Below are positions 33,526-63,777 of a stretch of 64,000 bases of DNA, piece by piece. This DNA is from Malacoraja senta. Its lineage: Eukaryota. Under the pieces are notes generated by a model. The model saw only the letters and a program-made list of their open reading frames with translations, was not told the DNA's origin and did not search any database. A program made the position numbers and the translations under genes. Location of the stretch: assembly GCA_038087875.1 (NCBI GenBank), contig JAXLNO010003509.1, forward strand, positions 1 through 64,000. Direction: 5' to 3'. How positions within the stretch are numbered: position 1 is the stretch's first letter; each line of letters opens with the position of its first letter.

Positions 33526-33786
33526 GGCCTCACACACTGATCTATTACTACACCCTGAACCACGTGAATACTCATCTACCAGAATATAGTGTCGTGGGTG
33601 TACTGGACGGTTGTGAGATACAGTATTATGACAAAAACATGGTCATTACAGTTCCAAGACAGAAATGGATGGCGGCTGCATTTGACAGGAATTACTGGGT
33701 AACAAATACGGTCTCTGAAACTGGTTTCCATGGAATCATCAAAGGGCAAGTCGATGAATGGATGCGGAGGCAGAACGAAACAGCAA
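33526..33786 (+). CDS. MHC class I-like heavy chain, alpha1-domain exon (copy A)
   Basis: tgtctag|GG..GCA A|gttagt, 261 nt, phase 1-1; GPHTLIYYYTLNHVNTHLPEYSVVGVLDGCEIQYYDKNMVITVPRQKWMAAAFDRNYWVTNTVSETGFHGIIKGQVDEWMRRQNETA; H3, Y7, PE.S.VG.LD, VPRQ.WM, Y59/W60-like, R84-like and the N86 glycan site (NET). Confidence 0.9.
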
Positions 33787-35949
33787 GTTAGTTCATTCAT
33801 TTCTATACATTCGGAGTGTGATCAATGTTCATAAAAAAACATCTCAAAGAAATTTCTCGCTGTGCCAGAGACCCAGGTTTGATCCTGACTACACGTTCTC
33901 CCTGTGACCACAGATATTTCCTCCAGCTGCTCCGGTTTCGTCCCATATCTTGAAAACACGAGAGTTTGTAGGTTAATTGGGCTCTGCAAATTACTCTTGT
34001 GTGCTGAGAATGGGTGAGAAAGTGGGATTACATAGATGTGTAGGAAGGAACTGAAGATGCTGGTTTACAGCAAAGATAGGCACAATGTGCTGGAGTAACT
34101 CAGCGGGACAGGCAGCATCTCTGGATACAAGGAATGGATGACTTTTCAGGTCAAGACCCTTCCTCACACAGAGTGTCTCCCCTGACTTACTCCAGCATTT
34201 TGTGTCCATTTTGGGATAACATAGAACTAGTGTGAAAGATGATCGATGGTTGGCATGGAATTGGTGGGCAGAATGGCCCATTTCCATGCTGAGTCACTAA
34301 CCTAAGAACTGCAGATGCTGCAAATGTGAAATAAAAACCAAAAATGCCATTGTCTGATGGCTTCATTGTCAGTTTATCACCATGGAAACCTGTAATTACC
34401 TTATCAGTGATACTCCCTATGTCCAACCATGCCTCCCACTCCTGTCTGTAACTTACACATTCTCACAATTCTGAAGCATTAATTTTGTATCTCTTTCCAT
34501 AGGTTCCATAGGTAACCAATATTTCAATGATTTGTAAAATGCTGTGCTTCCAGCATTTTACAAATCATTGAAATGTTGGTGGCTTTTTGAATGGTTAAAA
34601 TCCCTTGCGTACCTCAGCAATTGTTTTTACTTTTATTGACAAATTTAGAATGAAAAGTTGTGTGAAATATTTAAAGGATAACCTAAATGGCATTGTGGTT
34701 CAGCCGTAGTGATGGTGCCGTAGTGCCAGAGACCCAGGGTTGATCCTGGCCTCAGGTGCTGTCTGTACAGAGTTTGTACGTACTCCCCGTGACCTGCGTG
34801 GGATTTCCCCGGATGCTCCAGTTTCCTCCCACACTCCAAGCCTGTATGCCAAAGGGGATCACTGGTCACTGTGGACTCTAAGGGCTGTTTTCGTGCTATA
34901 TCTCTAAATTATCTTGGGCACCAATTGTAAAGTAAGCTGTCCAAATCCATCTGCACCACACTTGTATATCCATATAAGTTGCAATTGGACATGTTTTATA
35001 TTGTAAATCAATAAGTCCTATCACCATTACTGTGTTAATTCAATGACATTCGTAGTGTACCATTGAACAAAGCAGGACCAGGCGTGGGGGAACCATGGTG
35101 AGGTGGGGGACAAAGGAGGACCTGGTGTGGGAGACTTTATAACTTTGTCGGTGCCCTTTATGTGAAGAATCTTGACATACGTTGGGTTTACAAAACAAAG
35201 ACTTTCACTGTGACTTGTCACATGTCACAATAAAGTATCATTCATTCATGATTAATTATTGCTGAAAACATTGCTTTTTGTTACCTCTTCGGTTACACAT
35301 TAAACACATTATATTATTAATCTTTAACTGGACTAAAACAGGGTGAGGGTTACAAACAGGGAACAATACATCAAAATATTATGCACTGGGCATAATTTCT
35401 ATCAATTTTCCACATCTTGCAATATTTATTATTATTTTCAAATTATATGTGAATACATGTGAATGACATTTATTAGATTATCATCTGATTCATTGAACCT
35501 TGTTTATTGAATCATATTGCCTTCAAAAATATTTTTTTAATTTGCATTATTTATGGTGCACATATTATCTGCAACATTGTTATGTTTATGAGATTTATGA
35601 GCATATTGTCGGGGCTCAAGGGTGGGAACAAGAGGTAGAGATTGGGCAAGCCAGGGCTTTATTCCATGGAGCACAGGAGGCTGAAAGGGTGATCATATAG
35701 TGGTGCTTAAAATCATGAGGGGAATTGATAGAGTGTATGCCCAGAGCCTTTTACCCAGAGAAGGAGAATAAAATAACCAGAGGACATGGGTTTAATGTGA
35801 GAGGGGAAATATTTAATTGGAACTTGGGACAATCTTTGTGCTCAGAGAGTGGTCAGCATATGGAATGACCTGCCAGAGAATGGAGTTGCGGCAGGTACAA
35901 TAACAATATTTAAAAGACACATGGACAGGGACATGCATAGGTAGTTAAA

Positions 35950-36415
35950 AGTGCTGGAGAAACTCAGCGGGTGAGGCAGCATCTATGGAGCGAAGGAAAT
36001 AGGCAACGTTTCGGGCCGAAAACCCTTCTTCAGACTGATGTGAGGGTGGGGGGGAGTGGGGGGGGGGGGGGCACAGGAAGAAGAAAGGAAGAGGTGGAGC
36101 CAGTGGGCTGAGGGAGAGCTGAGAAGGGGAGGAGAAAGTAGGGACTACCTGAAATTAGAGAAGTCAATGTTCATACCGCTGGGGTGTAAACTGCCCAAGC
36201 GAAATATGAGGTGCTGCTCCTCCAATTTACGGTGGTCCTCACTCTGGCCATGGAGGAGGCCGAGGGCAGAAAGGTCGGATTTGGAATGGGAGGGGGGAGT
36301 TGAAGTGCTGATCCACCGGGAGATCAGGTTGGTTGTTGCGAACCGAGCGGAGGCGTTCGGCGAAACGATCGCCAAGCCTGCGCTTGGTCTCACTGATGTA
36401 GAGCAGTTGACATCT
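35950..36415 (-). mobile_element. Penelope-like element 3' end (GIY-YIG C-terminus plus terminal repeat)
   Basis: FNSPSHSKSDLSALGLLH.QSEDHRKLEEQHLIFRLGSLHPSGMNIDFSNFR*. Confidence 0.88.
36001..36036 (-). ncRNA. Minimal type I hammerhead-ribozyme motif
   Basis: Minus strand agt-CTGAAGA-a-gggt-tttcg-gccc-GAAAC-GTT-gcct. Confidence 0.62.
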
Positions 36416-37334
36416 AGAGAGAAACGTTTTGAATGATGTCTACCCATTGCAGGGTACATGGGACTAGCTTAAATGGGGTATCTTGATTAGCATGGACAAG
36501 TTGGGCCAAAGGGCTTGTTTCCCTGCTGTGTGACTCTATGACTGCTTTATAGCAAAGAGCGCTGCTGCCTCATAGCTCCAGTGATCCGTGTTCAATCATC
36601 TCCAGTGCAGTCTGTGTGGAGTATAAGCATTCTCCCTGTGACAATGTTTGTTCTCCAGTTTCCTCCCACATACCAAAATGTGCTGAATTAGTAGATTAAG
36701 CCACTGCTGCAAATAGGTGGATTTGTGGCATTGATAGAAATGAGAAAGATCCGTTTTGGGGAAAATTAGTGTTGGAATAATTTTGTTCTCTGGGCTAGAG
36801 TGGGCTCAGGAGGCTGAAAGGCCTCTTTCTCTGTCACATGGATTTATGGGCCGTTATTTATCCTTGAATTGCCTTCTTTCTCAATTTAGTCAACAATGTA
36901 AAATTGAAGTAATTGTCTGGATTGAACTATTTAACAATTGTAGATGAAAGGAAGAGCAGAGGCTGCTTTCCTCCACACACAAAGTGCTAAGGAACTCAAC
37001 GGGTCAAGCGGCATCTTTGGGGAACATGGGAAGGCAGATATTTCGGGTGAGGATCCTACTTCAGACTGAAGTTGGGTCACGTTAGAACATGCTTTGTACT
37101 CGCACTCGCAGTACAGTGTTAGTTTTCAAGGTTTTGTTGTTATTCACAGCTTGTAGTTGTTACATATTCAGCAGAGAGAAGACGAGACAAACTAAAGCAC
37201 CTGCAAAGCACAACTAAAAGACCGCAGAAAGAAGCTTGAAAAGAAGGCTCTTATCTAAACAACGTACTTTCAAGAGAGAGTTAGATTTAGCTCTTAAGGC
37301 TAAAGGAATCAAGGGATATGGAGGAAAAGATTAG

Positions 37335-39136
37335 TTAAAACAAATGTAGGTCCCTTGCCATCAGAAACAGGTGAATTGATCATGGGGAACAAGGACATGG
37401 CAGACCAATTGAATAACTACTTTGGTTCTGTCTTCACTAAGGAAGACTTAATTAATCTGCCGGAAATAGCAGGGGACCGTGGGTCAAATGAGTTGGAGGA
37501 TCTGAGTGAAATCCAGGTTAGCCGGGAAGTGGTGTTCAGTAAATTGAATGGCTTAAAGGCCGATAAATCCCCAGGGCCAGATAGGCTGCATCCCAGAGTA
37601 CTTAAGGAAGTAGCCCCAGAAATAGTGGATCCATTAGTGATAATTTTTCAAAACTCTTTAGATTTTGGAGTAGTTCCTGAGGATTGGAGGGTAGCTAATG
37701 TAACCCCACTTTTTAAAAAGGGAGGGAGAGAGAAAACGGGGAATTACAGATCAGTTAGTCTAACATTGGTAGTGGGGAAACTGCTAGAGTCAGTTATTAA
37801 AAATGGGATAGTAGCACATTTGGAAAATGGTGAAATCATTGGACAAAGTCAGCATTGATTTATGAAAGGTAAATCATGTCTGACGAATCTTATAGAATTT
37901 TTCGAGGATGTAACTATTAGAGTGGATAAGGGAGAACCAGTGGATGTGTTATATCTGGACTTTCAGAAGGCTTTCGACAAGGTCCCACATATGTGATTAA
38001 TATGCATACTTAAAGCACACGGTATTGGGGGTTCAGTATTGATGTGGATAGAGAACTGGCTGGCAGACAGGAAGCAAAGAGTAGGAGTAAACGGTTCCTT
38101 TTCAGAATGGCAGGCAGTGACTAGTGGCGTACCGCAAGGCTCAGTGCTGGGACCCCAGCTATTTACAATAAATATTAATGATTTGGACGAGGGAATTGAA
38201 TGCAACATCTCCAAGTTTGCGGATGACACGAAGCTGGGGGGCAGTGTTAGCTGTGAGAAGGGTGCTAGGAGGCTGCAAGATGACTTGGATAGGCTGGGTG
38301 AGTGGGCAAATGCATGGCAGATGCAGTATAATGTGGATAAATGTGAGGTTATCCACTTTGGTGGCAAAAACAGGAAAGTAGACTATTACCTGAATGGTGG
38401 CCGATTAGTAAAAGGGGAGATGCAACGAGAGCTGTACACCAGTCATTGAAAGTAGGCATGCAGGTGCAGCAGGCAGTGATGAAAGCAAATGGTATGTTAG
38501 CATTCATTGCAAAAGGATTTGAGTATAGGAGCAGGGAGGTTCTATTGCAGTTGTACAGGGTCTTGGTGAGACCACACCTGGGGTATTGCATACAGTTTTG
38601 GTTTCCTAATGTGAGGAAGGACATTCTTGCCATAGAGGGAGTACAGAGAAGGTTCACCAGACTGATTCCTGGGATATCAGGACTTTCATATGAAGAAAGA
38701 CTGGATAGACTCGGTTTGTACTCGCTCGAATTTAGAAGATTGAGGGGGGATCTTATAGAAACTTACAAAATTCTTAAGGGGTTGGACAGGCTAGATGCAG
38801 GAAGATTGTTCCCGATGTTGGGGAAGTCCAGAACAAGGGGTCACAGTTTAAGTATAAGAGGGAGGTCTTTTAGGACCGAGATGAGAAAATCATTTTTCAC
38901 ACAGAGAGTTGTGAATCTGTGGAATTCTCTGCCAGAGAAGGTAGTTGAGGCCAGTTCATTGGCTATATTTAAGAGGGAGTTAGATGTGGCCCTTGTGGCT
39001 AAAGGGATCAGGGGGTATGGAGAGAAGGCAGGTACAGTATACTGAGTTTAATGATCAGCCATGATCATATTGAATGGTGGTGCAGGCTCGAAGGGCCGAA
39101 TGGCCTACTCCTGCACCTATTTTCTATGTTTCTATG
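37335..39136 (+). mobile_element. CR1 LINE, ~1.8-kb 3' part with stops
   Basis: KSPGPDRLHPRVLKE, NYRSVSLT, GVPQGSVLGP, KFADDTKLG, RRLRGDLIETYKI; (tttctatg)n tail. Confidence 0.95.
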
Positions 39137-40338
39137 ACGGCACCCATGGTCAGGATTGAACCTGGCGGTCTCTTGAGCTGTAAGGCAGTAACTCTACCGC
39201 TGTTCCACCGTGTCACCCTTTTGTGGGGGATCATGACAGAAGCCTCCTCGTGGCGATCCACGGAACCGACTACACGATGCACTCTGAGACGCGTCGGGCG
39301 ACCAATTCTGTCAACATGTTGGACGACGACAGAAGCCAACAGTGAGCTACACCTCGTCTGACACACGAGCGAATGAACCCTTGTTAGACTAATCAACAAG
39401 TTTACGACTTATAAATATGATGTGATGCAACTAATTGAGAGTGCAGCATAGAGAGTGCAGCACAGAAACAAGCCCTTTTACCTATTGTCCATACTAACTA
39501 TTTTGGGACCTGATCTCTTTTTATTTTCCTGATATTTCCAATACCTACCCCTAGATTTTACTCTTTAACGACACACGGAGCAATAAATGGTGGCCTGTGA
39601 ACCAAATAACTGCCGTGACTTCCCTTTGTGGGTGGAATATCTGAATATCATATTTCCAAATGTTGATCAGTAAGGGCGACATGGTGGGGCAGCGATAGAG
39701 TTGCTGCCTTAAAGTGTCAGAGCCCCGGGTCCGATCCTGACTATGGCTGCTGTCTGTACGGAGTTTGTACGTTCTCCCCATGACCAGTGGGTTTTCGCCA
39801 AGATCTTCGGTTTCCTCCCACACTCCAAAGACGTACAGGTTTGTAGGTTAATAGGCTTGATATAAATGTAAATTGTCCTTCGTGTGTAGGATAGTGTTAA
39901 TGTGCGGGGATCTGTGCGGACTCGTGCTGAAGGGCCTGTTTCCACACTGTATCTCTAAACTAAACTAAAATAATCTAAGTAAGCTTGACATTTAGAATCA
40001 TGTACAGCATAGAAACAGGCCCTTCAGCCCAGCTTATCTATGCCAGCCAAGATGCCCCATCTACCCTTGACCCATCTATCTATATTTTAGCTTAGTTTAA
40101 TTTATTATTAATGTCACGTGTACTGTTTTGCAGTGAAAATGTTTCTTGTGTGCTATCCAGTCAGTGAAAAGACTACATTACAATGAAGCCGTTCACAATC
40201 TATAGATACAGGGTAAATGATATCATGTTTAGTGCAATGTAAATCTAATTGGTGTTTTGCCGATTTCCCTCCAAACCTTTCCTATCCATAGAAATTTCTA
40301 TTACTTGACAATAATTGTATTATTTTATTTGTGTCTAG

Positions 40339-40599
40339 GGCCTCACACACTGATCTACTACTACACCCTGAACCACGGGAGTACTCATCTACCAGAATAT
40401 AGTGTCGTGGGTGAACTGGATGGTTGTGAGATACAGTATTATGACAAAAACATGGTCATTACAGTTCCAAGACAGAAATGGATGGCGGCTGCATTTGACA
40501 GGAATTACTGGGTAACAAATACGGTCTCTGAAACTGGTTTCCATGGAATCATCAAAGGGCAAGTCGATGAATGGATGCGGAGGCAGAACGAAACAGCAA
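40339..40599 (+). CDS. MHC class I-like heavy chain, alpha1-domain exon (copy B)
   Basis: gtctag|GG..GCA A|gttagt, 261 nt, open; differs from copy A at 5 nt (V14G, N15S, V26E and 2 synonymous). Confidence 0.9.
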
Positions 40600-42759
40600 G
40601 TTAGTTCATTCATTTCAATACATTTGGAGTGTGATCAATGTTCATAAAAAAACACCTCAAAGAAATTTCTCGCTGTGCCAGAGACCCAGGTTTGATCCTG
40701 ACTACACGTTCTCCCTGTGAACACAGATATTTCCTCCAGGTTCTCCGGTTCCGTCCCATATCTTGAAAATGTGAGAGTTTGTAGGTTAATTGGGCTCTGT
40801 AAATTACTCTTGTGTGCTGAGAATGGGTGAGGAAAGAGGGATTACATAGATGTGTAGGAAGGAACTGAAGATGCTGGTTTACAGCAAAGATAGGCACAAT
40901 GTGCTGGAGTAACTCAGCGGGACAGGCAGCATCTCTGGATACAAGGAATGGATGACTTTTCAGGTCAAGACCCTTCCTCAGACAGAGTGTTTCCCCTGAC
41001 TTACTCCAGCATTTTGTGTCCATTTTGGGATAACATAGAACTAGTGTGAAAGATGATCGATGGTTGGCATGGAATTGGTGGGCAGAATGGCCCATTTCCA
41101 AGCTGAGTCACTAACCTAAGAACTGCAGATGCTGCAAATGTGAAATAAAAACCAAAAATGCCATTGTCTGATGGCTTCATTGTCAGTTTATCACCATGGA
41201 AACCTGTAATTACCTTATCAGTGATACTCCCTATGTCCAACCATGCCTCCCACTCCTGTCTGTAACTTACACATTCTCACAATTCTGAAGCATTAATTTT
41301 GTATCTCTTTCCATAGGTTCCATAGGTAACCAATATTTCAATGATTTGTAAAATGCTGTGCTTCCAGCATTTTACAAATCATTAAAATGTTGGTGGCTTT
41401 TTGAATGGTTAAAATCCCTTGCGTACCTCACCAATTGTTTTTACTTTTATTGACAAATTTAGAATGAAAAGTTGTGTGAAATATTTAAAGGATAACCTAA
41501 ATGTCATTGTGGTTCAGCCGTAGTGATGGTGCCGTAGTGCTATTGACCCAGGGTTGATCCTGGCCTCAGGTGCTGTCTGTACAGAGTTTGTACGTACTCC
41601 CCGTGACCTGCGTGGGATTTCCCCGGGTTCCCCGGTTTCCTCCCACACTCCAAGCCTGTATGCCAAAGGGGATCACTGGTCACTGTGGACTCTAAGGGCT
41701 GTTTTCGTGCTATATCTCTAAATTATCTTGGGCACCAATTGTAAAGTAAGCTGTCCAAATCCATCTGCACCACACTTGTATATCCATATAAGTTGCAATT
41801 GGACATGTTTTATATTGTAAATCAATAAGTCCTATCACCATTACTGTGTTAATTCAATGACATTCGTAGTGTACCATTGAACAAAGCAGGACCAGGCGTG
41901 GGGGAACCATGGTGAGGTGGGGGACAAAGGAGGACCTGGTGTGGGAGACTTTATAACTTTGTCGGTGCCCTTTATGTGAAGAATCTTGACATACGTTGGG
42001 TTTACAAAACAAAGACTTTCACTGTGACTTGTCACATGTCACAATAAAGTATCATTCATTCATGATTAATTATTGCTGAAAACATTGCTTTTTGTTACCT
42101 CTTCGGTTACACATTAAACACATTATATTATTAATATTTAACTGGACTAAAACAGGGTGAGGGTACAAACAGGGAACAATACATCAAAATATTATGCACT
42201 GGGCATAATTTCTATCAATTTTCCACATCTTGCAATATTTATTATTATTTTCAAATTATATGTGAATACATGTGAATGACGTTTATTACATTATCATCTG
42301 ATTCATTGAACCATGTTTATTGAATCATATTGCCTTCAAAAATATTTTTTTAATTTGCATTATTTATGGTGCACATATTATCTGCAACATTGTTATGTTT
42401 ATGAGATTTATGAGCATATTGTCGGGGCTCAAGGGTGGGAACAAGAGGGAGAGATTGGGCAAGCCAGGGCTTTATTCCATGGAGCACAGGAGGCTGAGGG
42501 GTGATCATATAGGGGTGCTTAAAATCATGAGGGGAATTGATAGATGTATGCCCAGAGCCTTTTACCCAGAGAAGGGGAATCAAATAACCAGAGGACATGG
42601 GTTGAATGTGAGAGGGGGAAGATTTAATTGGAACTTGGGGGCGATCTTTGTGCTCAGAGAGTGGTCAGCATATGGAATGACCTGCCAGAGAATGGAGTTG
42701 CGGCAGGTACAATAACAATATTTAAAAGACACATGGACAGGGACATGCATAGGTAGATA

Positions 42760-43230
42760 AAAGTGCTGGAGAAACTCAGCAGTTGAGGCAGCATCTATGG
42801 AGCGAAGGAAATAGGCAACGTTTCGGGCCGAAAACCCTTCTTCAGACTGATGTGAGGGTGGGTGGGAGGGGGGGAGTGGGGCGCAGGAAGAAGAAAGGAA
42901 AAGGTGGAGCCAGTGGGCTGAGGGAGAGCTGAGTAGGGGAGGAGAAAGTAAGGACTACCTGAAATTAAAGAAGTCAATGTTCATACCGTTGGGGTGTAAA
43001 CTGCCCAAGCGAAATATGAGGTGCTGCTCCTCCAATTTACGGTGGTCCTCACTCTGGCCATGGAGGAGGCCGAGGGCAGAAAGGTCGGATTTGGAATGGG
43101 AGGGGAGAGTTGAAGTGCTGATCCACCGGGAGATCAGGTTGGTTGTTGCGAACTGAGCGGAGGTGTTGGGCGAGGCGATCGCCAAGCCTGCGCTTGGTCT
43201 CACCGATGTAGAGCAGCTGACATCTAGAGA
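42760..43230 (-). mobile_element. Penelope-like element 3' end with hammerhead motif (42813-42848); duplicate of 35950-36415
   Basis: KLEEQHLIFRLGSLHPNGMNIDFFNFR*; ctgaagaagggttttcggcccgaaacgtt on the minus strand. Confidence 0.88.
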
Positions 43231-44149
43231 GAAACGTTTTGAATGATGTCTACCCATTGCAGGGTAAATGGGACTAGCTTAAATGGGGTATCTTGATTAG
43301 CATGGACAAGTTGGGCCAAAGGGCTTGTTTCCCTGCTGTGTGACTCTCTCTATGACTGCTTTATAGCAAAGAGCGCTGCTGTCTCACAGCTCCAGTGATC
43401 GGGTTCAATCATCTCCAGTGCAGTCTGTGTGGAGTATAAGCATTCTCCCTGTGACAATGTTTGTTCTCCAGTTTCCTCCCACATACCAAAATGTGCTGAA
43501 TTAGTAGATTAAGCCACCGCTGCAAATAGGTGGATTTGTGGCATTGATAGAAATGAGAAAGATCCGTTTTGGGGAAAATTAGTGTTGGAATAATTTTGTT
43601 CTCTGGGCTAGAGTGGGCTCAGGAGGCTGAAAGGCCTCTTTCTCTGTCACATGGATTTATGGGCCGTTATTTATCCTTGAATTGCCTTCTTTCTCAATTT
43701 AGTCAACAATGTAAAATTGAAGTAATTGTCTGGATTGAACTATTTAACAATTGTAGATGAAAGGAAGAGCAGAGGCTGCTTTCCTCCACACACAAAGTGC
43801 TAAGGAACTCAACGGGTCAAGCGGCATCTTTGGAGAACATGGGAAGGCAGATATTTCGGGTGAGGATCCTACTTCAGACTGAAGTTGGGACACGTTAGAA
43901 CATGCTTTGTACTCACACTTGCAGTCCAGTGTTAGTTTTCAAGGATTTTTTGTTATTCACAGCTTGTAGTTGTTACATATTCAGCAGACAGAAGATGAGC
44001 AAACTAAAGCACCTGCAAAGCACAACTAAAAGACCGCAGAAAGAAGCTTGAAAAGAAGGCTCTTATCTAAACAAAGTACTTTCAAGAGAGAGTTAGATTT
44101 AGCTCTTAAGACGAAAGGAATCAAGGGATATGGGGGAAAAGGTTAGTTA

Positions 44150-46036
44150 AAACAAATGTAGGTCCCTTGCAGTCAGAAACAGGTGAATTGATCATGTGGA
44201 ACAAGGACATGGCAGACCAATTGAATAACTACATTGGTTCTGTCTTCACTAAGGAAGACTTAATTAACTGCCGGAAAGAGCAGGGGACCGGGGGTCAAAT
44301 GAGATGGAGGAATTGAGTGAAATCCAGGTTAGCCGGGAAGTGGTGTTAGGTAAATTGAATGGATTAAAGGCCGATAAATCCCCAGGGCCAGATAGAGTGC
44401 ATCCCAGAGTACTTAAGGAAGTAGCCCCAGAAATAGTGGATGCATTAGTGATAATTTTTCAAAACTCTTTAGATTCTGGAGTAGTTCCTGAGGATTGGAG
44501 GGTAGCTAATGTAACCACACTTTTTGAAAAGGGAGGGAGAGAGAAGTGGGGAACCTGCTAGAGTCAGTTATTAAAGATGGGATAGCAGCACATTAGGAAA
44601 ATGGTGAAATCATTGGACAAAGTCAGCATAGATTTATGAAAGGTAAATCATGTCTGACGAATCTTATAGAATTTTTCGAGGATGTAACTAGTAGAGTGGA
44701 TAAGGCAGAACCAGTGGATGTGTTATATCTGGACTTTCAGAAGGCTTTCGACAAGATCCAACATAAGTGATTAGTATACAAACTTAAAGCACCTGGTATT
44801 GGGGGTTCAGTATTGATGTGGATAGAGAACTTGCTGGCAGACAGGAAGCAAAGAGTAGGAGTAAACGGGTCCTTTTTAGAATGGCAGGCAGTGACTAGTG
44901 GGGTACCTCAAGGCTCAGTGCTGGGACCCCAGCTATTTACAATATATATTAATGATTTGGACGAGGGAATTGAATGCAACATCTCCAAGTTTGTGGATGA
45001 CACGAAGCTGGGGGGCAGTGTTAGCTGTGAGGAGGGTGCTAGGAGGCTGCAAGGTGACTTGGATAGGCTAGGTGAATGGGCAAATGCATGGCAGGTGCAG
45101 TATAATGTGGATAAATGTGTGGTTATCCACTTTGGTGGCAAAAACAGGAAAGTAGACTATTACCTGAATGGTGGCTGATTAGGAAAAGGGGAGATGCAAC
45201 GAGACCTGGGTGTCATGGTACACCAGTCATTGAAAGTAGGCATGCAGGTGCAGCAGGCAGTGAAGAAAGCGAATGGTATGTTAACATTCATAGCAAAAGG
45301 ATTTGAGTATAGGAGCAGGGAGGTTCTTCTGCAGTTGTTCAGGGTCTTGGTGAGACCACACCTGGAGTATTGCCTACAGTTTTGGTCTCCTAATCTGAGG
45401 AAGGACATTGTTGCCATAGAGGGAGTACAGAGAAGGTTCACCAGACTGATTCCTGGGATGTCAGGACTTTCATATGAAGAAAGACTGGATACACTCTGCT
45501 TGTATTCGCTAGAATTTAGAAGATTGAGGGGGGATCTTATAGAAACTTACAAAATTCTTAAGGGGTTGGACAGGCTAGATGCAGGAAGATTGTTCCCGAT
45601 GTTGGGGAAGTCGAGAACAAGGGGTCACAGTTTAAGGATAAAGGGGAAATCTTTTAGGACTGAGATGAGAAAAACATTTTTTACACAGAGAGTGCTGAAT
45701 CTCTGGAATTCTCTGCCACAGAATGTAGTTGAGGCCAGTTCATTGGCTATATTTAAGAGGGAGTTAGATGTGGCCCTTGTGGCTAAAGGGATCAGGGGGT
45801 ATGGAGAGAAGGCAGGTACAGGATACTGAGTTGGATGATCAGCCATGATCATATTGAATGGCGGTGCAGGCTCGAAGGGCCGAATGGCTTGCTCCTGCAC
45901 CTATTTTCTGTGTTTCTATGTTTCTAAAAGCAGGAATGGGGTACTGATTCTAGATGCAGGCATGATCATATTGAATGGCGGTGCTGGCTCGAATGGCCGA
46001 ATGGCCTGCTCCTGTGCCTATTTTTCTATGTTTCTA
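44150..46036 (+). mobile_element. CR1 LINE (duplicate of 37335-39136) with a doubled 3' tail
   Basis: ORFs 44304-44561, 44813-45178 and 45194-45829. Confidence 0.93.
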
Positions 46037-48199: not shown

Positions 48200-48995
48200 A
48201 CCTATCACTACTGATGGATCTTCCCTGTAGGAGGAGGGAGAGCACTAGGACCCAGCTGAGTCATCACTACTGATGGATCTCCCTGCAGGAGGAGGGAGAG
48301 CACTAGGACCCAACAGAGTCATCACTACTGATGGATCTCCCTGCAGGAGGAGGGCACTAGGACCCAACTGACTGATGGATCTGCCCTATAGTGGGGGGGA
48401 GCACTAGGACCCAGCAGAGTCATCACTACTGATGGATCTTCCCTGCAGGAGGAGGGAGAGCACTAGGACCCAGCTGACCGATGGATCTGCCCTATAGGGG
48501 GGGAGCACTAGGACCCAGCAGAGTCATCACTACTGATTGATCTTCCCTGCAGGGGGAGGGGGACTAGGACCCAGCTGACCGATGGATCTGCCCTATAAGG
48601 GGGGGGGAGCACTAGGACCCAGCAGAGTCATCACTACTGATTGATCTTCCCTGCAGGAGGAGAGCACTAGGACCCAGCTGACCGATGGATCTGCCCTATA
48701 GGGGGGGGGAGCACTAGGACCCAGCAGAGTCATCACTACTGATTGATCTTCCCTGTAGGGGGAGGGGGACTAGGACCCAGCTGACCGATGGATCTGCCCT
48801 ATAGGGGGGGGAGCACTAGGACCCAGCAGAGTCATCACTACTGATTGATCTTCCCTGCAGGAGGAGGGAGAGCACTAGGACCCAGCTGACCGATGGATCT
48901 GCCCTATAGTGGGGGGGGGGAGCACTAGGACCCAGCAGAGTCATCACTACTGATTGATCTTCCCTGTAGGGGGAGGGGGACTAGGAGCCAGCAGA
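48200..48995. repeat. Higher-order minisatellite (alternating ~55-bp and ~45-bp units; g(c)actaggaccca about 15 times)
   Basis: atcactactgat(g/t)gatcttccctg..gagcactaggacccag alternating with ctgaccgatggatctgccctataggggg..gcactaggacccagcagagtc. Confidence 0.92.
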
Positions 48996-49332: not shown

Positions 49333-49567
49333 NNNNNNNNNNNNNNNNNNNNNNNNNNNNNNNNNNNNNNNNNNNNNNNNNNNNNNNNNNNNNNNNNNNN
49401 NNNNNNNNNNNNNNNNNNNNNNNNNNNNNNNNNNNNNNNNNNNNNNNNNNNNNNNNNNNNNNNNNNNNNNNNNNNNNNNNNNNNNNNNNNNNNNNNNNNN
49501 NNNNNNNNNNNNNNNNNNNNNNNNNNNNNNNNNNNNNNNNNNNNNNNNNNNNNNNNNNNNNNNNNNN
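49333..49567. other. Assembly gap (235 N), flanked by GT-rich simple sequence
   Basis: Run of N. Confidence 1.
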
Positions 49568-49830: not shown

Positions 49831-49834
49831 AAAG

Positions 49835-50651: not shown

Positions 50652-52404
<1,753 letters not shown>

Positions 52405-54230: not shown

Positions 54231-54589
54231 CACATGGAGAATCAATGTGGAGAATGCTAACATGCAGGGACACTTTGAAGTTAAGTAAGAAGGAGATGTT
54301 GGATCACTTGAAGAGAAATGTGGATAAATCCCCAGGACAGAGGGGGTGTAGTGGATGATAATAATAATCGTTGAAAACATTAGTGCCGTGCTGGTTTCCA
54401 ATGGGCACGGTGACGGACGCACCACACATCTCTGTCCTCCATGCAGCTGGCAAGCTCCTCTTTTGTCTCTACACATGCGTCTTCCATCAACGTCTTCAAC
54501 ATCGTCTTGAATGGCCATCCTGGGTCAAGTCTTCCATGGGTGGAAGACGCATGCCAGCAAACAGGCATGTCTGGCATTTAACGAGCATT

Positions 54590-54735
54590 GATGTATATAT
54601 TGTAGACTTTCGTCCCAAATATCTTTCGTTATGGGTTGGCCTAATTCATTTTCCCATGTGTGTCTATATAAATCCGTCGGCGGGACCTCACTATCTAAGA
54701 GGGTATTATAAATATGAGATATTAATTTTTCTGTA
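54590..54735 (-). mobile_element. L1 ORF2 C-terminal fragment
   Basis: LISHIYNTLL..WENELGQPITKDIWDESLQYIHQCSLNARH, homologous to 1240-1410. Confidence 0.75.
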
Positions 54736-54754
54736 TTAAGATTCAAGATTCAAG

Positions 54755-55580
54755 ATTCAAGAAGTTTATTGCCATGTCAACTGAGTTGATAGGAATTTGA
54801 CTTGCCATGCAGCACACAAATAAAGATTACAACAAAGAATTTAACAGTAAACATAAAAACATCCCCCCACAATGGTTCCCACTGTGGGGGAAGGCAGCAA
54901 AGTCCAGTCCCATCCCCAGTTCACCCATAGTCGGGGCCTATTGAGGCCTCTGCAGTCGCCGCTACGGCAGCCCGATGCCTCAGGCCCTCTCGCCGGATGA
55001 TGAAGCTCCGGCGTCGGGTGAACACTCTCAGCGGCCCGGAGTGTCTGGAGCGGCTGCCTCCTCCCAGTAGACCGCGGCTCCCGAAGTCCACGAGCCGCGC
55101 TGGTCGATGCCCCGACTCTGTCGACCTCGTCGTCAGATCCCAGGCTCCGCGGTGTTCCAAGCTCAGCGCCGCTGGAAGCTCCACTGACCGCAGACCGCAG
55201 CTCTGCGATGTTAGTGCTGGCCGTCACAGCACTCCGGAGCTTACTGCACGGCGACCCGGGTTAGGCATCGCCCGCTCCGCGATGGTGCTTCAGCGCTGTG
55301 CCGCCGCCGAAGCTGAAGTCCTGGCCGGTCCCGGCAGGAAAACGCCGCTCCAGCCTGCCCGTAGGCCGCGAGGAAGGGGCGAAGATACGGCTCGGAGAAA
55401 AGCCGCATCTCCGACCAGGTAGGGACTGAGAAGAATAGTTTCCCCCTTCCCCCTACCCCCCCCCCCCCCCACATAAAAAGACTAAAAGATCTCCAACCAA
55501 CACTCTCAACTAACTAAAAATAAAAAAAAGAGTGAAAAAACTAACAGCTGCTGGCGGGGCAGCCATATTCGACGGCACCC
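54755..55580 (-). mobile_element. GC-rich non-autonomous repeat (family copy 5)
   Basis: (ttcaaga)n reverse tail; ctc(c/t)gcg(a/g)tg motifs; reverse 5' block ctaacagctgctggcggggcagccat. Confidence 0.6.
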
Positions 55581-55984
55581 CCTGTTGATGTTATTAGGAT
55601 GTTTATTCAAACATTCATCAAGGATTTCTGGTTCCCTAGTTCTGTAATCTTGTGTATTTGATTTAATGTAATCTCTAATTTGTAAATATCTGAAAAAGTT
55701 ATTTGAGTGTGGTCCGTAAATCTGTTGTAACCCCTGAAATTAAAGAAAAGTGCCTTTCCTATAAAGATGTCCCATCTTTTTAATTCCTTAATTTTTCTAT
55801 TGTGTAAAGCCTTTATCCAACATGGAGGGTTTGAATAAAGGGTTGTTTATAATGGGGAGACAGAGTGATAAATTATCCAATTTTAAAGTCTTTTTTAATT
55901 GTTTCCAAATTCGTATACCACTATATATTATAGAATTTTCACTATAGGTTTTTTAATGCAATTTTGTGGGAGCAAACATAATCG

Positions 55985-56260
55985 AACCAATTTCAAAAGG
56001 CAAACAGTCTTTCACTATTTTGTATGACTCAATGAGGTCCCCCCTTATTCTTCTAAACTCCAGCGAGTACAGGCCCACTGCCATCAAATGGTCATCATAT
56101 GTTAACCCATTCATTCCTGGGATCATTCTTGTACACCTCCTCTGGACACTCTCCAGAGCCAGCACATCCTTCCTCAGATATGGTGCCCAAAATTGCTCAC
56201 AATGCTCCAAATGTGGCCTGACCGGCGCCTTATAGAACCTCAGCATTACATCCCTGTTTG
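55985..56260 (-). mobile_element. CR1 LINE fragment
   Basis: VMLRFYKAPVRPHLEHCEQFWAPYLRKD..LYSLEFRRIRGDLIE. Confidence 0.9.
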
Positions 56261-56579: not shown

Positions 56580-56880
56580 TTGGTTTAGTTTAGAGATAGA
56601 GTATGGAAACAGGAACTTTGGGCCACTGAGTCCGCACTGACCAGCAATTGCCCATTCACTATTTTTGTCCTACAAGCTAGGGACAATTTACAGAAGCCAA
56701 TTAACCTACAAACCTGCACGTCTTTTGTATTTGGGAGGAAACCGTAGCCCCCAGAGAAAACCCACAGGGTGACAGAGAGAACGTACAAACTCCGTCCAGA
56801 CAGCACTCTAGTCAGGATCGAACCCGGGTCTCTAATGCTGTAAGACAGCCATTCTATCACTGTGCCACTGTGTTGCCTTA
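56580..56880 (-). mobile_element. tRNA-derived V-SINE
   Basis: Reverse tail, V-domain and B box ggatcgaacccggg. Confidence 0.85.
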
Positions 56881-58085: not shown

Positions 58086-59139
58086 AACTGTTAAGTTGAA
58101 GTCAGAAAGAACAGATGCAAGAAGTATGAAGACGGACACCAAGCTGAAACATTACGTAACCATGTCTTCCAGATGCTGCCTGAGCCACTGAGTTACACCT
58201 GCACGTTTTTGTGTTTTTTTTAAATTACAGTAAAGTTATCCACCTGCAAAATCAGGACAGCCTGACCTACTTGAGTACTGCAGTATGTGCTGCATTTTAT
58301 ATAACTCTGTTTAGTTTCATGCATGCAGAGATGCAGTGAAATGGTTTGGATGGAACAGCAGATGCTGGACACCCCGTCCCTTCTCTCCAGAGATGCTGCC
58401 TGTCCCGCTGAGTTACTCCAGCTTTTTGTGTCTGTCTGCAGTGAAATGGTTGTTCTGCATTCTCCCCAGTCAAGTCATACTGTACATAAGTACAATTCGT
58501 CCTCTTCTGGAACAGCACGCAGAGATCCACCACATTCCAGGACTATCTTGCAGCTTCCAAGTCTCTGAGAAGTCTGATTTTGCCCTAAGGAAATACCCAA
58601 TTTCACATTTTCTCATGTTAAGGCCCAGTGTCATAACAGCACTGGATTGATGAAGTAGAGGCGCCTGCCTCAGTTTAAGTTTTTCTGTTTCAAGATTGTG
58701 ATCAAACCCTCGTCACTGGAACTGTGTCGCAGTGCCACCCATTACGTATCAGTCCCAATTATCTTTCAACATGCTGGAATCACTTGTTTTTTATCCTTTT
58801 TAGACTTTTTTCATGAATTGTTCAGCTTAAACAGTTATGCTACAGCAGTTAAGCGCAGCTACCACTTAGTTCCAGAGACGTAACAACACAAGAGATAGTG
58901 TTGGAAGAATGATCAAACTCACACATAGTGGTTAGAATCCATAGTCTTTTATTAGTAACTCTGCAGATGAAACACAAGGTGCTTTCTTCTCAGCATGCTT
59001 ACTACCAGTCTACCAGAGAGAGAGAGAGCTGTCTAATAAGCCTGTGGGCGGAGCCACAGTATGAGTGACACTAATCTACAGATAGGCACAGGGATAAGTT
59101 TCGGTTTATTATTGTCACGTTTAGTTTCGAGGTACAGCA

Positions 59140-59410
59140 TGAAAATAGGCCTTTTGGCCCACTGAACCTGTGCTGACTAACGACCACCCAAATATTAGTT
59201 CTATCCTACACACTAGGGACAATTTACAGAAGCCAAAAAACTTACAAACCTGCACGTCTTTGAATGTGACGGAACTGTAGCACCCGGAGATAACTCACAT
59301 GGTCACAGGGAGAATGTATGAACTCTATATAGACAGCACCCATTGTCAGGATTGAACTTTGGTCTGTGGTACTGTAAGGCAGCAACTTTCCCTCTGCGCC
59401 ACTGTGCTGC
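59140..59410 (-). mobile_element. tRNA-derived V-SINE
   Basis: Reverse V-SINE body and head (gtcaggattgaac..ctgcgccactgtgc). Confidence 0.8.
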
Positions 59411-60715
59411 CCATGTACTGAGGTAGAGTGTAAAGCTTTGTTTTGCATGCTATCCAATTGGATGAGGTAACAAAATACATATATATGATCATCAAACTCA
59501 AGTACTGTAGGTAGAGCAAAGGGGAAGGTACAGAGTGTGGCATGTAGTTCTCAGCAATGTAGCACAGCAGTTCCATTAGATAAGTGTTTCGACACGAAAC
59601 GTAACACATTCCTTCTCTCCAGAGATGCTGCCTGACCCGTTGAGTTACTCTAGCATTTTGTGTCTATCTGCGGTTTAAACCAGCATCTACAGTTCCTCCC
59701 TACATAGTTCTATAAACAAAGTCCACTGTCTTTAATGGGGTAGTGGTCATTTGGACAGTACCCTAGCTTATGGAACGATCATTCAGAAGCCTGATTTTCT
59801 CCTCGGTTATTAAGTTTCCGAGTAAGCCATTTGGTCCTCTAACCTGCCCACCATTCAATATGACCATGGCTGACGTTCCTCAGGCATCAACTCCTGTTCG
59901 ATATCAGTTCCTCATTGCACTCAGTTCTCCAATTTAAGTTTAATTAAGTTAACTAACGCCACATTAAATGCTTCCAATGATTTTGTCTTCACAAATCTCT
60001 GGCGCCAGAGAATGACCACACTCTGCAAAAAGAGATTTTGTAAACAAATGACTGGTCTCTTTTATCTCTTATTGAAGAGGAGTGAAAATACTGCCAATTT
60101 TAAGCTTGTCCCCTCCCCAATTGACCCTCATTTCGTAACTTGTCAATTATTTATTATTGTCAATAATATGCCCTAGTGAAAAGATTTGCCGATGGTATTA
60201 GTTTATTATTGTCACATGAACTGTGATATAGTCAAAAGTTTGTCTGTGTGTTATCCAATCAGATCATACTACACATGTGCAATCAAGCCATCCACAAGTA
60301 GAACAGTGCAAAGAGAAAAATTCTCAGAGTGCAGAATATCGGGTTACAATATCATAGCATTACAGTTACAGAGAAAGTGCAGATCAAAAAGAGTTGCAAG
60401 GATCACAATGAGATTGGTTGGAAGATCAGGGCAACATCTTATCTTACATGAGAACCATTCAGTAGTCCAATAACAGTGGGGAAGTAGCTGTTCCTGAATT
60501 TAATGGTACGTACTTTCAAACTTTCTTGTGTACTGTCTTAACAGGGAGCGTGCGATCCCTTTTAAACCACGTGGTTGGTTGATGGTGCCGAAAGAGGCAA
60601 AATGGGGCAGATGTGGACAGTAACTTGGTTGTTGTAGTGGACTGAAGAATATTTTGTGGTGGGTGACTGTGCAAGTTTTACTGAAGATGAAAATAACCAT
60701 CTTACTGTCTTGTAG

Positions 60716-60982
60716 TTTCCCCTGAGGTCACTCTCGCTGCCCGCCCTGATGATCATTCAGTCCTGTACTGCACTGTGTTTGGATTTTACCCACCGGCCAT
60801 CAATGTCAGCTGGTTGCAGAATGGTCAACATGTCTCTGAGACCAAATCTTCTGGGGTCATACCCAACAACGATGGAACATATCATCTAAGGTCTGTCCTT
60901 GAGTATGATCCGTATGATGGGAAACAGTATTCCTGTCATGTCGATCACAGCAGCCTGCCCGGTGGGAAGACCATCATCTGGG
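60716..60982 (+). CDS. MHC class I-like alpha3 (Ig C1-set) exon
   Basis: cttgtag|TT TCC..TGG G|gtaaga, 267 nt, phase 1-1; xSPEVTLAARPDDHSVLYCTVFGFYPPAINVSWLQNGQHVSETKSSGVIPNNDGTYHLRSVLEYDPYDGKQYSCHVDHSSLPGGKTIIW; C-GFYP-W-PNNDGTY-YSCHVDH is the class I alpha3 signature. Confidence 0.95.
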
Positions 60983-61329
60983 GTAAGAACGTTAAATATT
61001 CTTTCATAGATAATCATTATCTTCTGTTGTTTCCATTTTAATCATCATGAATACATCCCATATTCCAAGATGCTTAAACTTTCTTTGTTTAGTGGTGTTG
61101 CTCTAAGTAATCACGTAATCAGCACCCACTCTCCGCATGAGCAGAAGACTTTGTCAACAGAACATTTATCAAAAGTAAATAAATAACTAATATATAAGGA
61201 AGGAGTATTTGAGATTCTCAGTGGTGGAACTGAAATCTATGAAAGGTATGTTTAAATAAAAAATGAATCTTTCCTCATGATGTGATTAACAGCAAGGCAC
61301 TGGGGGAGTACATGCCCCAATCTGAATCA

Positions 61330-61760
61330 ATGGTCCGAAGTGGAAATGATTGAGAGCTTCATGTTCCTTGGCATGAATTTATCCAATATTCTGTAAAGGA
61401 CTGACCACATAGCCAAGGAGGCACACCGACACCTCTACTTCCTCAGGAGACTGAGAATATTCATCATGTCTCTGGTGACTCCAGCAAACATCTATAGATG
61501 CCGCTAGAGAAAGCATGTTGTTGGGTTGCATCACATCTTGATTTGGGAACTGCACTGCCCAAGACTGCAAGAATATACAAAGAGTTAAAGATCATCACAC
61601 AGGCCAGACTTCCCACTATTGGCTCAATCTACACTAGGTTGCCTTGGAAAACGAGACTTATCCCAACCTTCCTCCTTCTTGCTCCCATCAGGCATTAGGT
61701 ACAGAAAGTTGAAAATATGCACTGCCAGACTCAGGAACACCCCCTTTCCACCTGTTAACA
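61330..61760 (+). mobile_element. Degenerate Rex1/Babar-type LINE fragment
   Basis: VEMIESFMFLGMN.., AKEAHRHLYFLRRLR, LLGCITS*FGNCTAQDCK. Confidence 0.7.
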
Positions 61761-62480
61761 GGCTTCGGAAGGGTCCTTCCATAATGTAGGTTTAATGCCC
61801 GATTCACCTCAACCTCATTGAACATTGAACATTGTCCATGGAACTGATGTGTTACAATGCTGAGAACTATATTCTGTACTCTGTATCCTCCTCTTTGCTC
61901 TATCTATTGTTTTTGAGTTTGTATTTATGTATAGTTTTATAATTTGTTTGGATAGCATACAAAACAAACTTTGCTCATATTTTGAAACATCTGGCGTTAA
62001 TAAAACTAAACCTAATGAAGTAAGTTCCATGACGCAAGTTACAGATTCAGCAACGAAAAATATAACTGCCTGACAAACAGCGATCGTAGAAGTTTGATTC
62101 CAAGTATGCTGCACTAACCTACACAAATGCTCACTTTTGAAGATTCCCTCGAACAATGCACAACTAAGGAATCTGATGTTTCACTCTGAAGACTGTTGAC
62201 ATACCCCAGAACTTAATTTCCAACCTATCTATGTATCATCAGCAATCTAGGCTACAGCGCCACCAGTCCCTTCATCTGCTCTTAATACCAACGATAAGTA
62301 GTTCACTTTCTTGCATTGATTCCCAACCTGCAGTTGCAGTTTCCCAACCAGAACACTCCTTTAAGACAACTCTCTGCTTGCTCTTAATTGTTTTTCCATT
62401 CATGCTAATTATTACCCCCAATGTCATAAGCCATGTGCCTTTGCATCACTTGATCAGATATCTTATGAAAATCCAGATAT

Positions 62481-62500
62481 TGTGGCGACATCTGGTGGTC
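62481..62500 (-). promoter_or_regulatory. Candidate CTCF site in the alpha3-TM intron
   Basis: Minus strand GACCACCAGATGTCGCCACA versus consensus CCASYAGRKGGCR (one core mismatch); motif match only. Confidence 0.4.
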
Positions 62501-63669
62501 AGGCCACTTATTGCTAGAACCCTCGTCAGGGGAGCTGGGACTATCACGTGAGTGACAGGGTTTTGGTGGGAGTTGGTGATGAGTTAATCGCCAGTCAACT
62601 GGTGTGCCCGATAACAACGGCAGGAACTTTGCTCAAGTCCTTACTAAACGCGAGTGGGCCAAAACTGTATTTCTTTAAAAAAACATTGATTTGTTCACGA
62701 CGTTTGGATCTCTACAATATATTGTATTTCTTTTGTTTCTCATTCCAATTTTGTTACCTATTCTGCTTTTCCATCATTTTGTTTATGAATTTTAGGCTTT
62801 TCACACCTGCTGCTCGAATATACATTGTCTACGGGTTCCTGTTGCATTTTCAAAGAGTTCTAATCAATTTCTCAAACAAAGTTTGAAGAAGGGTCCCAAA
62901 ACGAAACGTCACCTGTCCATGTGTAAGAAGAAACTGCAAATGCTGGTTTACACCAAAGATGGACACAAATTGCTGGAATAACTCAGCTGGTCAGCCAGCA
63001 TCTCTGGAGAAAAGGAATAGGTGATGAATCCATGTTCGCCAGAGATGCTGCCTGTTCCGCTGAGTTACTCCAGCATTTTGTGTCTATTATGTATATTCTT
63101 TCCACTGACTGGTTAGCATGAAACAAAAGCTTTTCACTGTACCTCAATACATGTGACAATAAACTAAACTAAAGCTTTTGTGTAAATCAGTATCTGCATC
63201 TCTTTCTTTCTACAATTTTCCTGATAATGCCCTGATAATGCACTTTATTGTTTTGTTATTACTTAAATGTTCTGCCATTATTGAAAGGAATCCAGCATTT
63301 TCCCCAAAACAAATGTTAGTTTATATAGGGTTAAAGCTTTCTGCTTTCAATTCACCTTCTTTCATGAATTAAGTTGTGGCTGTGATGGTGCCATATATCA
63401 TAGTTGTACAGAACATATATTGTCCCTTTGCCATGCTGCAGAACTCCGTGATTCAAAACACCATATCATCTTATATACCTTGAAAAGCCCCAAATATAGA
63501 CACAAAATGCTGGAGTAACTCAGCGGTCAGGTAACATCTCTGGAGAAAAGGAATAGGTGGCATTTCGGGTCGAGACCCTTCTTCACCCTGAAGTCTTCAG
63601 ACAGTGCCCATCTATTTAGCTGCACAGCTTAACAATTGATTTGTAAAATTATGCATTCTTATTTTTCAG

Positions 63670-63777
63670 AAGGAAATAGGAAGAAAGACAGGCACATAGG
63701 CCTTATTGCCGTGTGTGTGCTGATATTGCTGGCTATTGTCTTGGCAGTAATTGTTTGGTGGAGAAAAAAGAGGAGAG
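63670..63777 (+). CDS. Connecting-peptide/transmembrane exon of the MHC class I-like gene
   Basis: tttttcag|AA GGA..AGA G|gtaaga, 108 nt, phase 1-1; EGNRKKDRHIGLIAVCVLILLAIVLAVIVWWRKKRR, a ~21-aa hydrophobic span with a basic stop-transfer. Confidence 0.9.

What the first reader, a model, noticed from the sequence alone, without database searches (positions are those of the whole stretch)
33526..63777. MHC class I-like gene with no detectable alpha2 exon: possible genome-encoded two-domain (alpha1-alpha3) heavy chain
Seen: clean, open, phase 1-1 exons for alpha1, alpha3 and TM. Reading the 20-kb interval 40600-60715 I found no alpha2-like exon (no LQ..GC motif, GC..C pair or YDG.DF); it is nearly all TE. 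Alpha1 splices in frame to alpha3. Known: class I chains are alpha1-alpha2-alpha3. W-category chains pair alpha1 with a beta2m-like Ig (WA) or an alpha2-like domain with an alpha3-like Ig (WB). This combination fits neither, since the Ig has PNNDGTY rather than the beta2m DWSF. The HLA-G2 splice isoform is alpha1-alpha3 and has been proposed to form class II-like dimers. Inference: this could be a hard-wired two-domain lineage of that type, or a pseudogene, or an assembly loss.
Basis: partly seen in the sequence, partly recalled or inferred. Interest (0 to 1): 0.8.

Follow-up and report, generated by a model that had tools for sequence, protein, structure and literature searches.

The report
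Skate class I gene, alpha2 deleted
This is one copy of a multi-copy skate immune gene (a CD1-like MHC class I lineage) whose second-domain exon was removed by a mapped 1.4-kb deletion, so it is most likely a recently disabled copy and not a new two-domain antigen-presenting molecule.

Summary
Open phase 1-1 exons for alpha1 (33526-33786, with a second copy at 40339-40599), alpha3 (60716-60982) and TM (63670-63777) are present. No alpha2 exon exists anywhere in the assembled window.

The gene belongs to the elasmobranch CD1-like class Ib lineage. Its nearest solved relative, PDB 9ch4, and the orthologues in three other skates all have alpha2.

Synteny with those three loci puts the missing exon between 54543 and 56010. 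There, 1423 bp of the orthologue (alpha2 plus flanks) is replaced, at sharp breakpoints, by 1467 bp of unrelated repeat-like sequence. This site is 5 kb downstream of the N gap, which sits inside a GT-rich simple repeat. The gap therefore does not explain the loss.

The leader exon is also absent, but a second gap (16665-17238) confounds that. On the window's own branch, alpha3 plus TM carry 0 of 369 changes against 2.65% in introns. The alpha1 copies drift near the intron rate.

Most likely this is a young dead or null copy in a birth-and-death family. The scan has already found the same alpha2-less architecture on other pieces of this genome (s1-140132, s1-140120 and others). An amplified, still-used alpha2-less subfamily is therefore not excluded. 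No read-level or RNA evidence could be obtained.

The parts
33526..33786 (+). alpha1 exon, copy A (phase 1-1, open, splice sites identical to orthologues)
40339..40599 (+). alpha1 exon, copy B (5 nt / 3 aa different from copy A; intact splice sites)
32328..45926 (+). two units of a 6.8-kb tandem duplication (32328-39136 and 39144-45926, 97.3% identical), each carrying one alpha1 exon and ending in the same repeat tail
49333..49567 (.). assembly gap in the alpha1-alpha3 intron, flanked on both sides by GT-rich degenerate microsatellite; not at alpha2's syntenic site
54544..56009 (+). deletion scar: 1467 bp of unrelated, repeat-like sequence (a dispersed repeat at about 54848-55470) standing where the orthologues have 1423 bp holding the alpha2 exon
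60716..60982 (+). alpha3 exon (C1-set Ig domain; no lineage-specific substitution)
63670..63777 (+). connecting peptide / transmembrane exon ending in WWRKKRR; the tail exon lies beyond the window
16665..17238 (.). second assembly gap; synteny with orthologous intron 1 starts 48 bp after it, and the leader exon expected about 5 kb upstream of that anchor is not in the window

Best explanation
The locus is one copy of the skate member of the elasmobranch CD1-like MHC class Ib lineage. Earlier scan notes call this lineage UGA, and UFA/UGA are mentioned in PMC12562908; I could not verify the name.

Its ancestor had the usual leader-alpha1-alpha2-alpha3-TM-tail structure. In this copy a deletion removed about 1.4 kb: 481 bp of upstream intron, the 279-bp alpha2 exon, and about 660 bp downstream. 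The wound is occupied by unrelated repeat-derived sequence.

Without alpha2 the alpha1/alpha2 ligand-binding platform cannot form. The copy is therefore most likely a young pseudogene or null copy in a birth-and-death, multi-copy family. Its remaining exons still look intact because the loss is recent, or because gene conversion from intact paralogues keeps them alike, or both.

Shown: the lineage assignment, the deletion and its breakpoints, the irrelevance of the gap, and the duplication of alpha1. Inferred: loss of function.
For: - Nearest solved relative: PDB 9ch4_A (268 aa) matches alpha1 at residues 3-86 (E 2e-36) and alpha3 at 182-268 (E 8.5e-35), with a full alpha2 between them.
- Orthologues: P0154 (A. 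radiata), P0156/P0157 (L. erinacea) and P0164 with 9 paralogues (R. longicauda) all have alpha2.
- Left breakpoint: homology to L. erinacea (L001) and A. radiata (L002) runs to w54543.
- Right breakpoint: homology resumes at w56010 against L001 and L002, and at w56007 against R. longicauda (L003).
- In L001 the 1423 bp between those points holds alpha2 (54471-54749). L001 and L002 are 96% identical across it.
- Both breakpoints are sharp in three-way alignments.
- No residual alpha2 similarity remains in the window.
- No leader exon is present in the window.
- The two alpha1 copies differ at 5 of 258 nt (3 nonsynonymous, 2 synonymous) against 2.7% in their flanks. Their lineage-specific rates (3/258 and 4/258) do not differ from the intron rate of 69/2601.
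- The family is multi-copy with truncated members: at least 10 on one Rhinoraja chromosome.
- No alpha2-less protein of this lineage appears among 5.8 billion predicted proteins.
Against: - All remaining exons are open, with splice sites identical to functional orthologues.
- alpha3 plus TM carry 0 of 369 lineage-specific substitutions against 69 of 2601 in introns (Fisher p 1.4e-4). They were constrained, or homogenised, for most of this copy's own history.
- Unverified scan notes report the same alpha1-alpha3-TM architecture on at least seven other pieces of this genome. Two of them have alpha1-to-TM spans (23,457 and 23,463 letters) nearly equal to the 23,439 bp from alpha1 copy B to the TM exon here. 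A deletion-bearing copy that was amplified and stays open could still be in use.
- Absence of the leader is confounded by the gap at 16665-17238.
Confidence: 0.65

Rival explanations
1. A functional alpha2-less gene or subfamily. The deletion-bearing copy was amplified and is expressed as alpha1-alpha3-TM, forming class II-like dimers as proposed for HLA-G2. In this window it could instead be expressed as alpha1-alpha1'-alpha3-TM, with the duplicated alpha1 taking alpha2's place in the platform.
For: - Exons are in frame and open, and the splice sites are intact on both alpha1 copies.
- alpha3 plus TM have 0 of 369 lineage-specific changes against 2.65% in introns.
- Scan notes list at least seven further alpha2-less copies on other pieces.
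Against: - Phase 1-1 is a property of every class I gene, so being in frame costs nothing.
- The alpha1 exons evolve at about the neutral rate.
- No leader exon is in the window.
- No such protein or transcript is on record.
- The deletion looks accidental, with repeat debris in its place.
- Pseudogene fragments are commonly amplified with segmental duplications in MHC regions (general knowledge).
- The other copies may be assembly redundancy.
Confidence: 0.13
2. Assembly artefact. The alpha2 exon exists in the animal but was dropped, either in the N gap 49333-49567 or by a collapse near 54.5-56.0 kb.
For: - A gap of only estimated length lies in the intron.
- The region is repeat-rich and multi-copy.
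Against: - Synteny puts alpha2 5 kb downstream of the gap, in contiguous sequence.
- The gap's two flanks are the same simple repeat.
- The 1467-bp replacement has no homology to the orthologous flanks of alpha2, so a simple collapse between repeats does not explain it.
- Two runs of one organism hold 67% and 58% of the sampled 31-mers of 54300-56200.
- Notes report the same deletion on other pieces.
Confidence: 0.05
3. The alpha3 and TM exons stay conserved because transcripts that start in a neighbouring copy use them (read-through or array splicing), not because this copy's own alpha1 is used.
For: - alpha3 and TM are conserved while alpha1 drifts.
- Read-through isoforms that fuse this gene to its neighbour are annotated in L. 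erinacea.
- Notes mention a copy with leader-alpha1-alpha2 but no alpha3.
Against: - No upstream class I exons are present in this window.
- The idea is purely inferential.
- Gene conversion explains the same pattern more simply.
Confidence: 0.04

Closest known systems
Elasmobranch CD1-like MHC class Ib lineage (UFA/UGA; solved member PDB 9ch4 chain A; annotated skate genes XP_032898133 A. radiata, XP_055521885 L. erinacea, XP_078272153 R. longicauda)
   Same: alpha1 is 86-94% and alpha3 92-94% identical to the skate genes, and about 65% identical to 9ch4. The intron phases and splice sites are the same, the TM exon ends in RKKRR, and the introns are syntenic.
   Different: The alpha2 exon is deleted, alpha1 is tandemly duplicated, and the leader was not found. 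The tail exon lies outside the window.
HLA-G2 / HLA-G6 (alpha1-alpha3 splice isoforms of HLA-G)
   Same: The predicted product would join alpha1 directly to alpha3 in frame.
   Different: HLA-G2 arises by skipping an exon that the gene still has. Here the exon is gone from the DNA, and no transcript is known.
W-category MHC (WA/WB; PMC8713811)
   Same: Two-domain chains (one membrane-distal domain plus one Ig domain) in cartilaginous fish.
   Different: Both domains here have their best matches in three-domain class I molecules. The two-domain state is a recent secondary loss and not an old category.
Truncated class I gene fragments in mammalian MHCs (birth-and-death pseudogenes)
   Same: A multi-copy family with copies that lack single exons or carry frameshifts, spread by segmental duplication.
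   Different: The remaining exons here are still open, and alpha3 and TM are unusually well kept.

Membership tests
MHC class I heavy chain, elasmobranch CD1-like (UGA/UFA-type) lineage | alpha1 domain homologous to lineage members | tested here: met
   PDB 9ch4_A E 2e-36; P0001 E 2.9e-44; 86-94% identity to skate genes. Pfam MHC_I alone gave no hit for the isolated exon.
MHC class I heavy chain, elasmobranch CD1-like (UGA/UFA-type) lineage | alpha2 exon between alpha1 and alpha3 | tested here: not met
   No hit by tblastn or by DNA Smith-Waterman. The syntenic site 54544-56009 holds unrelated sequence.
MHC class I heavy chain, elasmobranch CD1-like (UGA/UFA-type) lineage | C1-set Ig alpha3 domain of class I type | tested here: met
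   Pfam C1-set E 3.5e-20; 9ch4_A residues 182-268 E 8.5e-35, followed by MR1, CD1 and class I alpha3 domains.
MHC class I heavy chain, elasmobranch CD1-like (UGA/UFA-type) lineage | TM exon ending in a basic stop-transfer, plus a separate DYQNI tail exon | tested here: inconclusive
   The TM exon is 89-97% identical to orthologues. No DYQ[NTS]I exon is in the window. In orthologues the tail exon lies 6 kb or more downstream of TM, which is beyond the window's end.
MHC class I heavy chain, elasmobranch CD1-like (UGA/UFA-type) lineage | Leader exon upstream of alpha1 | tested here: inconclusive
   The best ungapped match to orthologous leaders is 36/72, which is chance. Synteny begins 48 bp after the gap at 16665-17238.
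MHC class I heavy chain, elasmobranch CD1-like (UGA/UFA-type) lineage | Colinear introns with annotated orthologues | tested here: met
   Colinear blocks at 86-92% identity with L001, L002 and L003 across intron 1, the alpha2-alpha3 intron and the alpha3-TM intron.
W-category MHC (WA/WB) | Membrane-distal and Ig domains closest to W sequences, with two-domain genes as the ancestral state | tested here: not met
   The closest relatives of both domains are three-domain class I genes. The loss of alpha2 is specific to this lineage. W sequences themselves were not compared.
HLA-G2-type alpha1-alpha3 isoform | Produced by alternative splicing from a gene that keeps alpha2; a transcript has been observed | tested here: not met
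   The exon is absent from the DNA. No RNA holder is on record for alpha3, and no such protein is in the collection.
Pseudogene / gene remnant | Loss of an essential part | tested here: met
   alpha2 is deleted.
Pseudogene / gene remnant | Relaxed constraint or disabling changes in the remaining exons | tested here: inconclusive
   There are no stops or frameshifts. The alpha1 copies evolve at about the intron rate (p 0.2 and 0.4), but alpha3 plus TM show 0/369 against 69/2601 (p 1.4e-4).
Pseudogene / gene remnant | No transcription or translation | not testable with these tools

The most novel reading that the evidence does not exclude
In this skate, an alpha2-deleted copy of the CD1-like class Ib gene was amplified into a small subfamily that is still expressed. 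It would give genome-encoded alpha1-alpha3 chains, or here alpha1-alpha1'-alpha3 chains, that build a groove from two alpha1 domains. That would be a natural, hard-wired analogue of the proposed HLA-G2 dimer and of the class II design.
Probability: 0.1. Interest if true: 0.85.

Novelty: new member of a known kind. Interest (0 to 1): 0.3.

Why it matters
As a dead copy, it documents birth-and-death turnover in the CD1-like class Ib family of skates: multi-copy in Rhinoraja, and exon-deleted or frameshifted copies in this genome.

It would matter far more if the alpha2-less copies proved to be a used subfamily. A class I chain without alpha2, encoded in the genome, would bear on how class I and class II architectures interconvert. 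The pattern found here makes that question cheap to settle with the other copies and one RNA data set: alpha3 and TM are kept, alpha1 drifts, and the same architecture is reported on several other pieces.

Tried and rejected
No read-level check of the breakpoints, and no RNA junction evidence, was possible.
- Complex prediction of alpha1 copy A with alpha1 copy B gave no verdict (score 0.19, below the mark of 0.34). It counts neither for nor against pairing.
- The look-up of encoding contigs for P0001 found nothing on record. P0157, P0154 and P0186 were used instead.
- A leader search found nothing: 72-nt cores of two orthologous leaders and 2-kb flanks.
- Apparent class I hits at 12873-13629 are retroelement parts fused into mis-annotated proteins, not MHC exons.
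- Weak matches of 54707-54752 and 55771-55970 to A. radiata fall inside an A. radiata-specific 5.9-kb insertion. They were rejected as orthology.
- Pfam gave no hit for the repeat ORFs.
- A paper search for 9CH4 and for a primary UFA/UGA paper found only a review mention.
- The source species could not be named. It is not L. erinacea, A. radiata or R. longicauda.
Full report
**What is there.**
- The window carries open exons of an MHC class I-like gene on the + strand: alpha1 at 33526-33786, alpha3 at 60716-60982 and the connecting-peptide/TM exon at 63670-63777.
- All three have AG acceptors and GT donors and are phase 1-1.
- A second, nearly identical alpha1 exon lies at 40339-40599. A 6.8-kb segment is tandemly duplicated (32328-39136 and 39144-45926, 97.3% identical).
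- The splice sites of both alpha1 copies and of alpha3 are identical or nearly identical to those of functional orthologues.

**What family it belongs to.**
- Pfam recognises alpha3 as a C1-set domain. It gives no hit for the isolated alpha1 exon.
- Against solved structures, both domains hit one chain far above all others. This is 9ch4_A, a 268-residue three-domain molecule. alpha1 matches residues 3-86 (E 2e-36) and alpha3 matches residues 182-268 (E 8.5e-35). The next hits are ordinary fish, bird and shark class I molecules, MR1 and CD1.
- An exhaustive profile-free search with alpha1 found full-length relatives. Cluster look-ups named them: class I 'F10 alpha chain-like' genes of Leucoraja erinacea, Amblyraja radiata and Rhinoraja longicauda, plus sawfish, rays and many sharks.
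- All of these have an alpha2 domain with the GC...C pair.
- A review states that two CD1-like, MHC-linked class Ib genes, UFA and UGA, exist in sharks and rays and bind lipids (PMC12562908; see also PMC10751288). Earlier scan notes call this lineage UGA. I could not verify which of the two names applies.
- The window's exons are 86-94% identical to the skate proteins and identical to none of them. The source is therefore another skate, or an unsampled paralogue.

**Is alpha2 really missing?** Three searches found nothing.
- tblastn with four close relatives at permissive settings found only the two alpha1 exons, alpha3 and TM.
- Smith-Waterman alignment of the L. erinacea alpha2 exon DNA against the whole window scored at the level of shuffled controls.

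**Where alpha2 should be.**
- I fetched the genomic loci of three orthologues: L001 (L. erinacea), L002 (A. radiata) and L003 (R. longicauda). Exons were mapped on each.
- Introns are colinear with the window at 86-92% identity.
- Homology to L001 and L002 runs up to w54543. It resumes at w56010 against L001 and L002, and at w56007 against L003.
- In L001 the 1423 bp between those points contains alpha2 (54471-54749). L001 and L002 are 96% identical right through that segment, so the ancestral state is clear.
- Three-way alignments show both breakpoints to be sharp.
- The window has 1467 bp of unrelated sequence in that place. It includes a dispersed repeat (about 54848-55470), whose other copies are about 70% identical, and a homopolymer-rich stretch.
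- alpha2 was therefore lost by a lineage-specific deletion with repeat-derived filler. It was not lost by failing to be assembled.

**The gap.**
- The gap at 49333-49567 was examined first, as the scan's program asked.
- It lies 5 kb upstream of the deletion, in sequence with no counterpart in the three orthologous loci, and 340 bp from a 102-bp satellite.
- The last 100 bases before it and the first 40 after it are the same GT-rich degenerate microsatellite. This is what a break inside a simple repeat looks like.
- A second gap (16665-17238) matters more. Synteny with intron 1 of the orthologues begins 48 bp after it. The leader exon, which lies 5.2-5.3 kb upstream of that anchor in L001 and L003, is nowhere in the window. 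Whether the leader is lost or merely unassembled cannot be told.

**Selection.** I counted substitutions unique to the window at sites where the other taxa agree.

| Region | Unique substitutions | Rate or test |
|---|---|---|
| Introns (four-taxon) | 69 / 2601 | 2.65% |
| alpha1 copy A | 3 / 258 | vs introns p = 0.2 |
| alpha1 copy B | 4 / 258 | vs introns p = 0.4 |
| alpha3 | 0 / 264 | – |
| TM (three-taxon) | 0 / 105 | – |
| alpha3 + TM | 0 / 369 | vs introns Fisher p = 1.4e-4 |

- Exon counts are and the tests.
- alpha3 plus TM differ strongly from introns. The alpha1 copies do not.
- The two alpha1 copies differ at 5 of 258 sites (3 nonsynonymous, 2 synonymous), against 2.7% in their flanks.
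- The remaining exons were therefore constrained, or homogenised by conversion, for most of this copy's history. alpha1 has drifted about neutrally since the duplication.
- This fits a recent loss of function. It does not exclude continuing use of alpha3 and TM.
- The timing argument weakens if the tandem alpha1 units arose by unequal crossing-over between paralogues that had already diverged.

**Family context.**
- Rhinoraja longicauda has at least ten paralogues of this gene on one chromosome, including truncated models.
- L. erinacea has copies on two unplaced contigs, with read-through isoforms into a neighbouring GPR139-like gene.
- Notes of this scan report the following on other pieces of the same genome:
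  - a frameshifted copy;
  - a copy with leader-alpha1-alpha2 but no alpha3;
  - at least seven alpha1-alpha3-TM copies without alpha2.
- Two of the alpha2-less copies were followed up. They were explained by the same 1.4-kb deletion patched by repeat sequence.
- Two of the reported spans (23,457 and 23,463 letters) nearly equal the 23,439 bp from alpha1 copy B to the end of the TM exon here.
- I could not read those pieces. They may be real paralogues that share one ancestral deletion, or redundant contigs of one locus.

**Independent data.**
- No RNA run is on record as holding alpha3. Six coded organisms hold 64-77% of its 31-mers, which fits an exon with no private changes.
- Two runs of one organism hold 67% and 58% of the 31-mers of 54300-56200. 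This gives some raw-data support for the assembled scar.
- A complex prediction for the two alpha1 domains gave no verdict.

**Verdict.**
- This is not a separate two-domain lineage. It is a three-domain CD1-like class Ib gene that lost its alpha2 exon by deletion, and it is most likely a young dead or null copy (confidence about 0.65).
- The main open point is whether the alpha2-less form is a single accident seen many times or an amplified subfamily still in use. The well-kept alpha3 and TM exons, and the number of similar copies noted elsewhere in this genome, keep that reading alive at about one in ten.

Noticed in passing
window 7827-8487 (-): Fragment of a GPR139-like rhodopsin-family GPCR (Pfam 7tm_1, E 4e-09). 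It is about 60% identical to the GPR139-like gene that neighbours this class I gene in L. erinacea. It lacks the first 60 residues and its two aligned parts are in different frames, so it is probably a pseudogene.
   Followed up: partly
window 32328-45926: 6.8-kb tandem duplication at 97.3% identity. It gives two spliceable alpha1 exons, and default splicing would yield alpha1-alpha1'-alpha3. Each unit ends in the 3' end of the same dispersed repeat.
   Followed up: partly
window 48204-48992: Satellite of 102-bp units (7 copies, 91% matches; higher-order period 206 bp) with no counterpart in the three orthologous loci, 340 bp before the N gap.
   Followed up: no
window 2588-3202: Tandem array with a period of about 48 bp (self-matches offset by 48, 96, 143 and 191 bp, about 90% identical).
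   Followed up: no
window 51235-52404 (+): Two long ORFs (114 and 187 aa) in lineage-specific intron sequence that read like a transposase remnant. Pfam gave no hit.
   Followed up: partly
L002 53831-59755 and L001/L002 versus the window at 58612-58680 and 61314-61349: Large lineage-specific insertions distinguish the orthologous introns. A 1.1-kb repeat at window 13851-14927 matches two of the pieces present in Amblyraja and Leucoraja but absent at the corresponding window sites.
   Followed up: no
quartet of window, L001, L002, L003 introns: Branch lengths are very uneven: window 2.65%, Rhinoraja copy 8.4%, internal branch to Leucoraja + Amblyraja about 6%. Either rates differ about three-fold, or the compared copies are not strict orthologues.
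   Followed up: no
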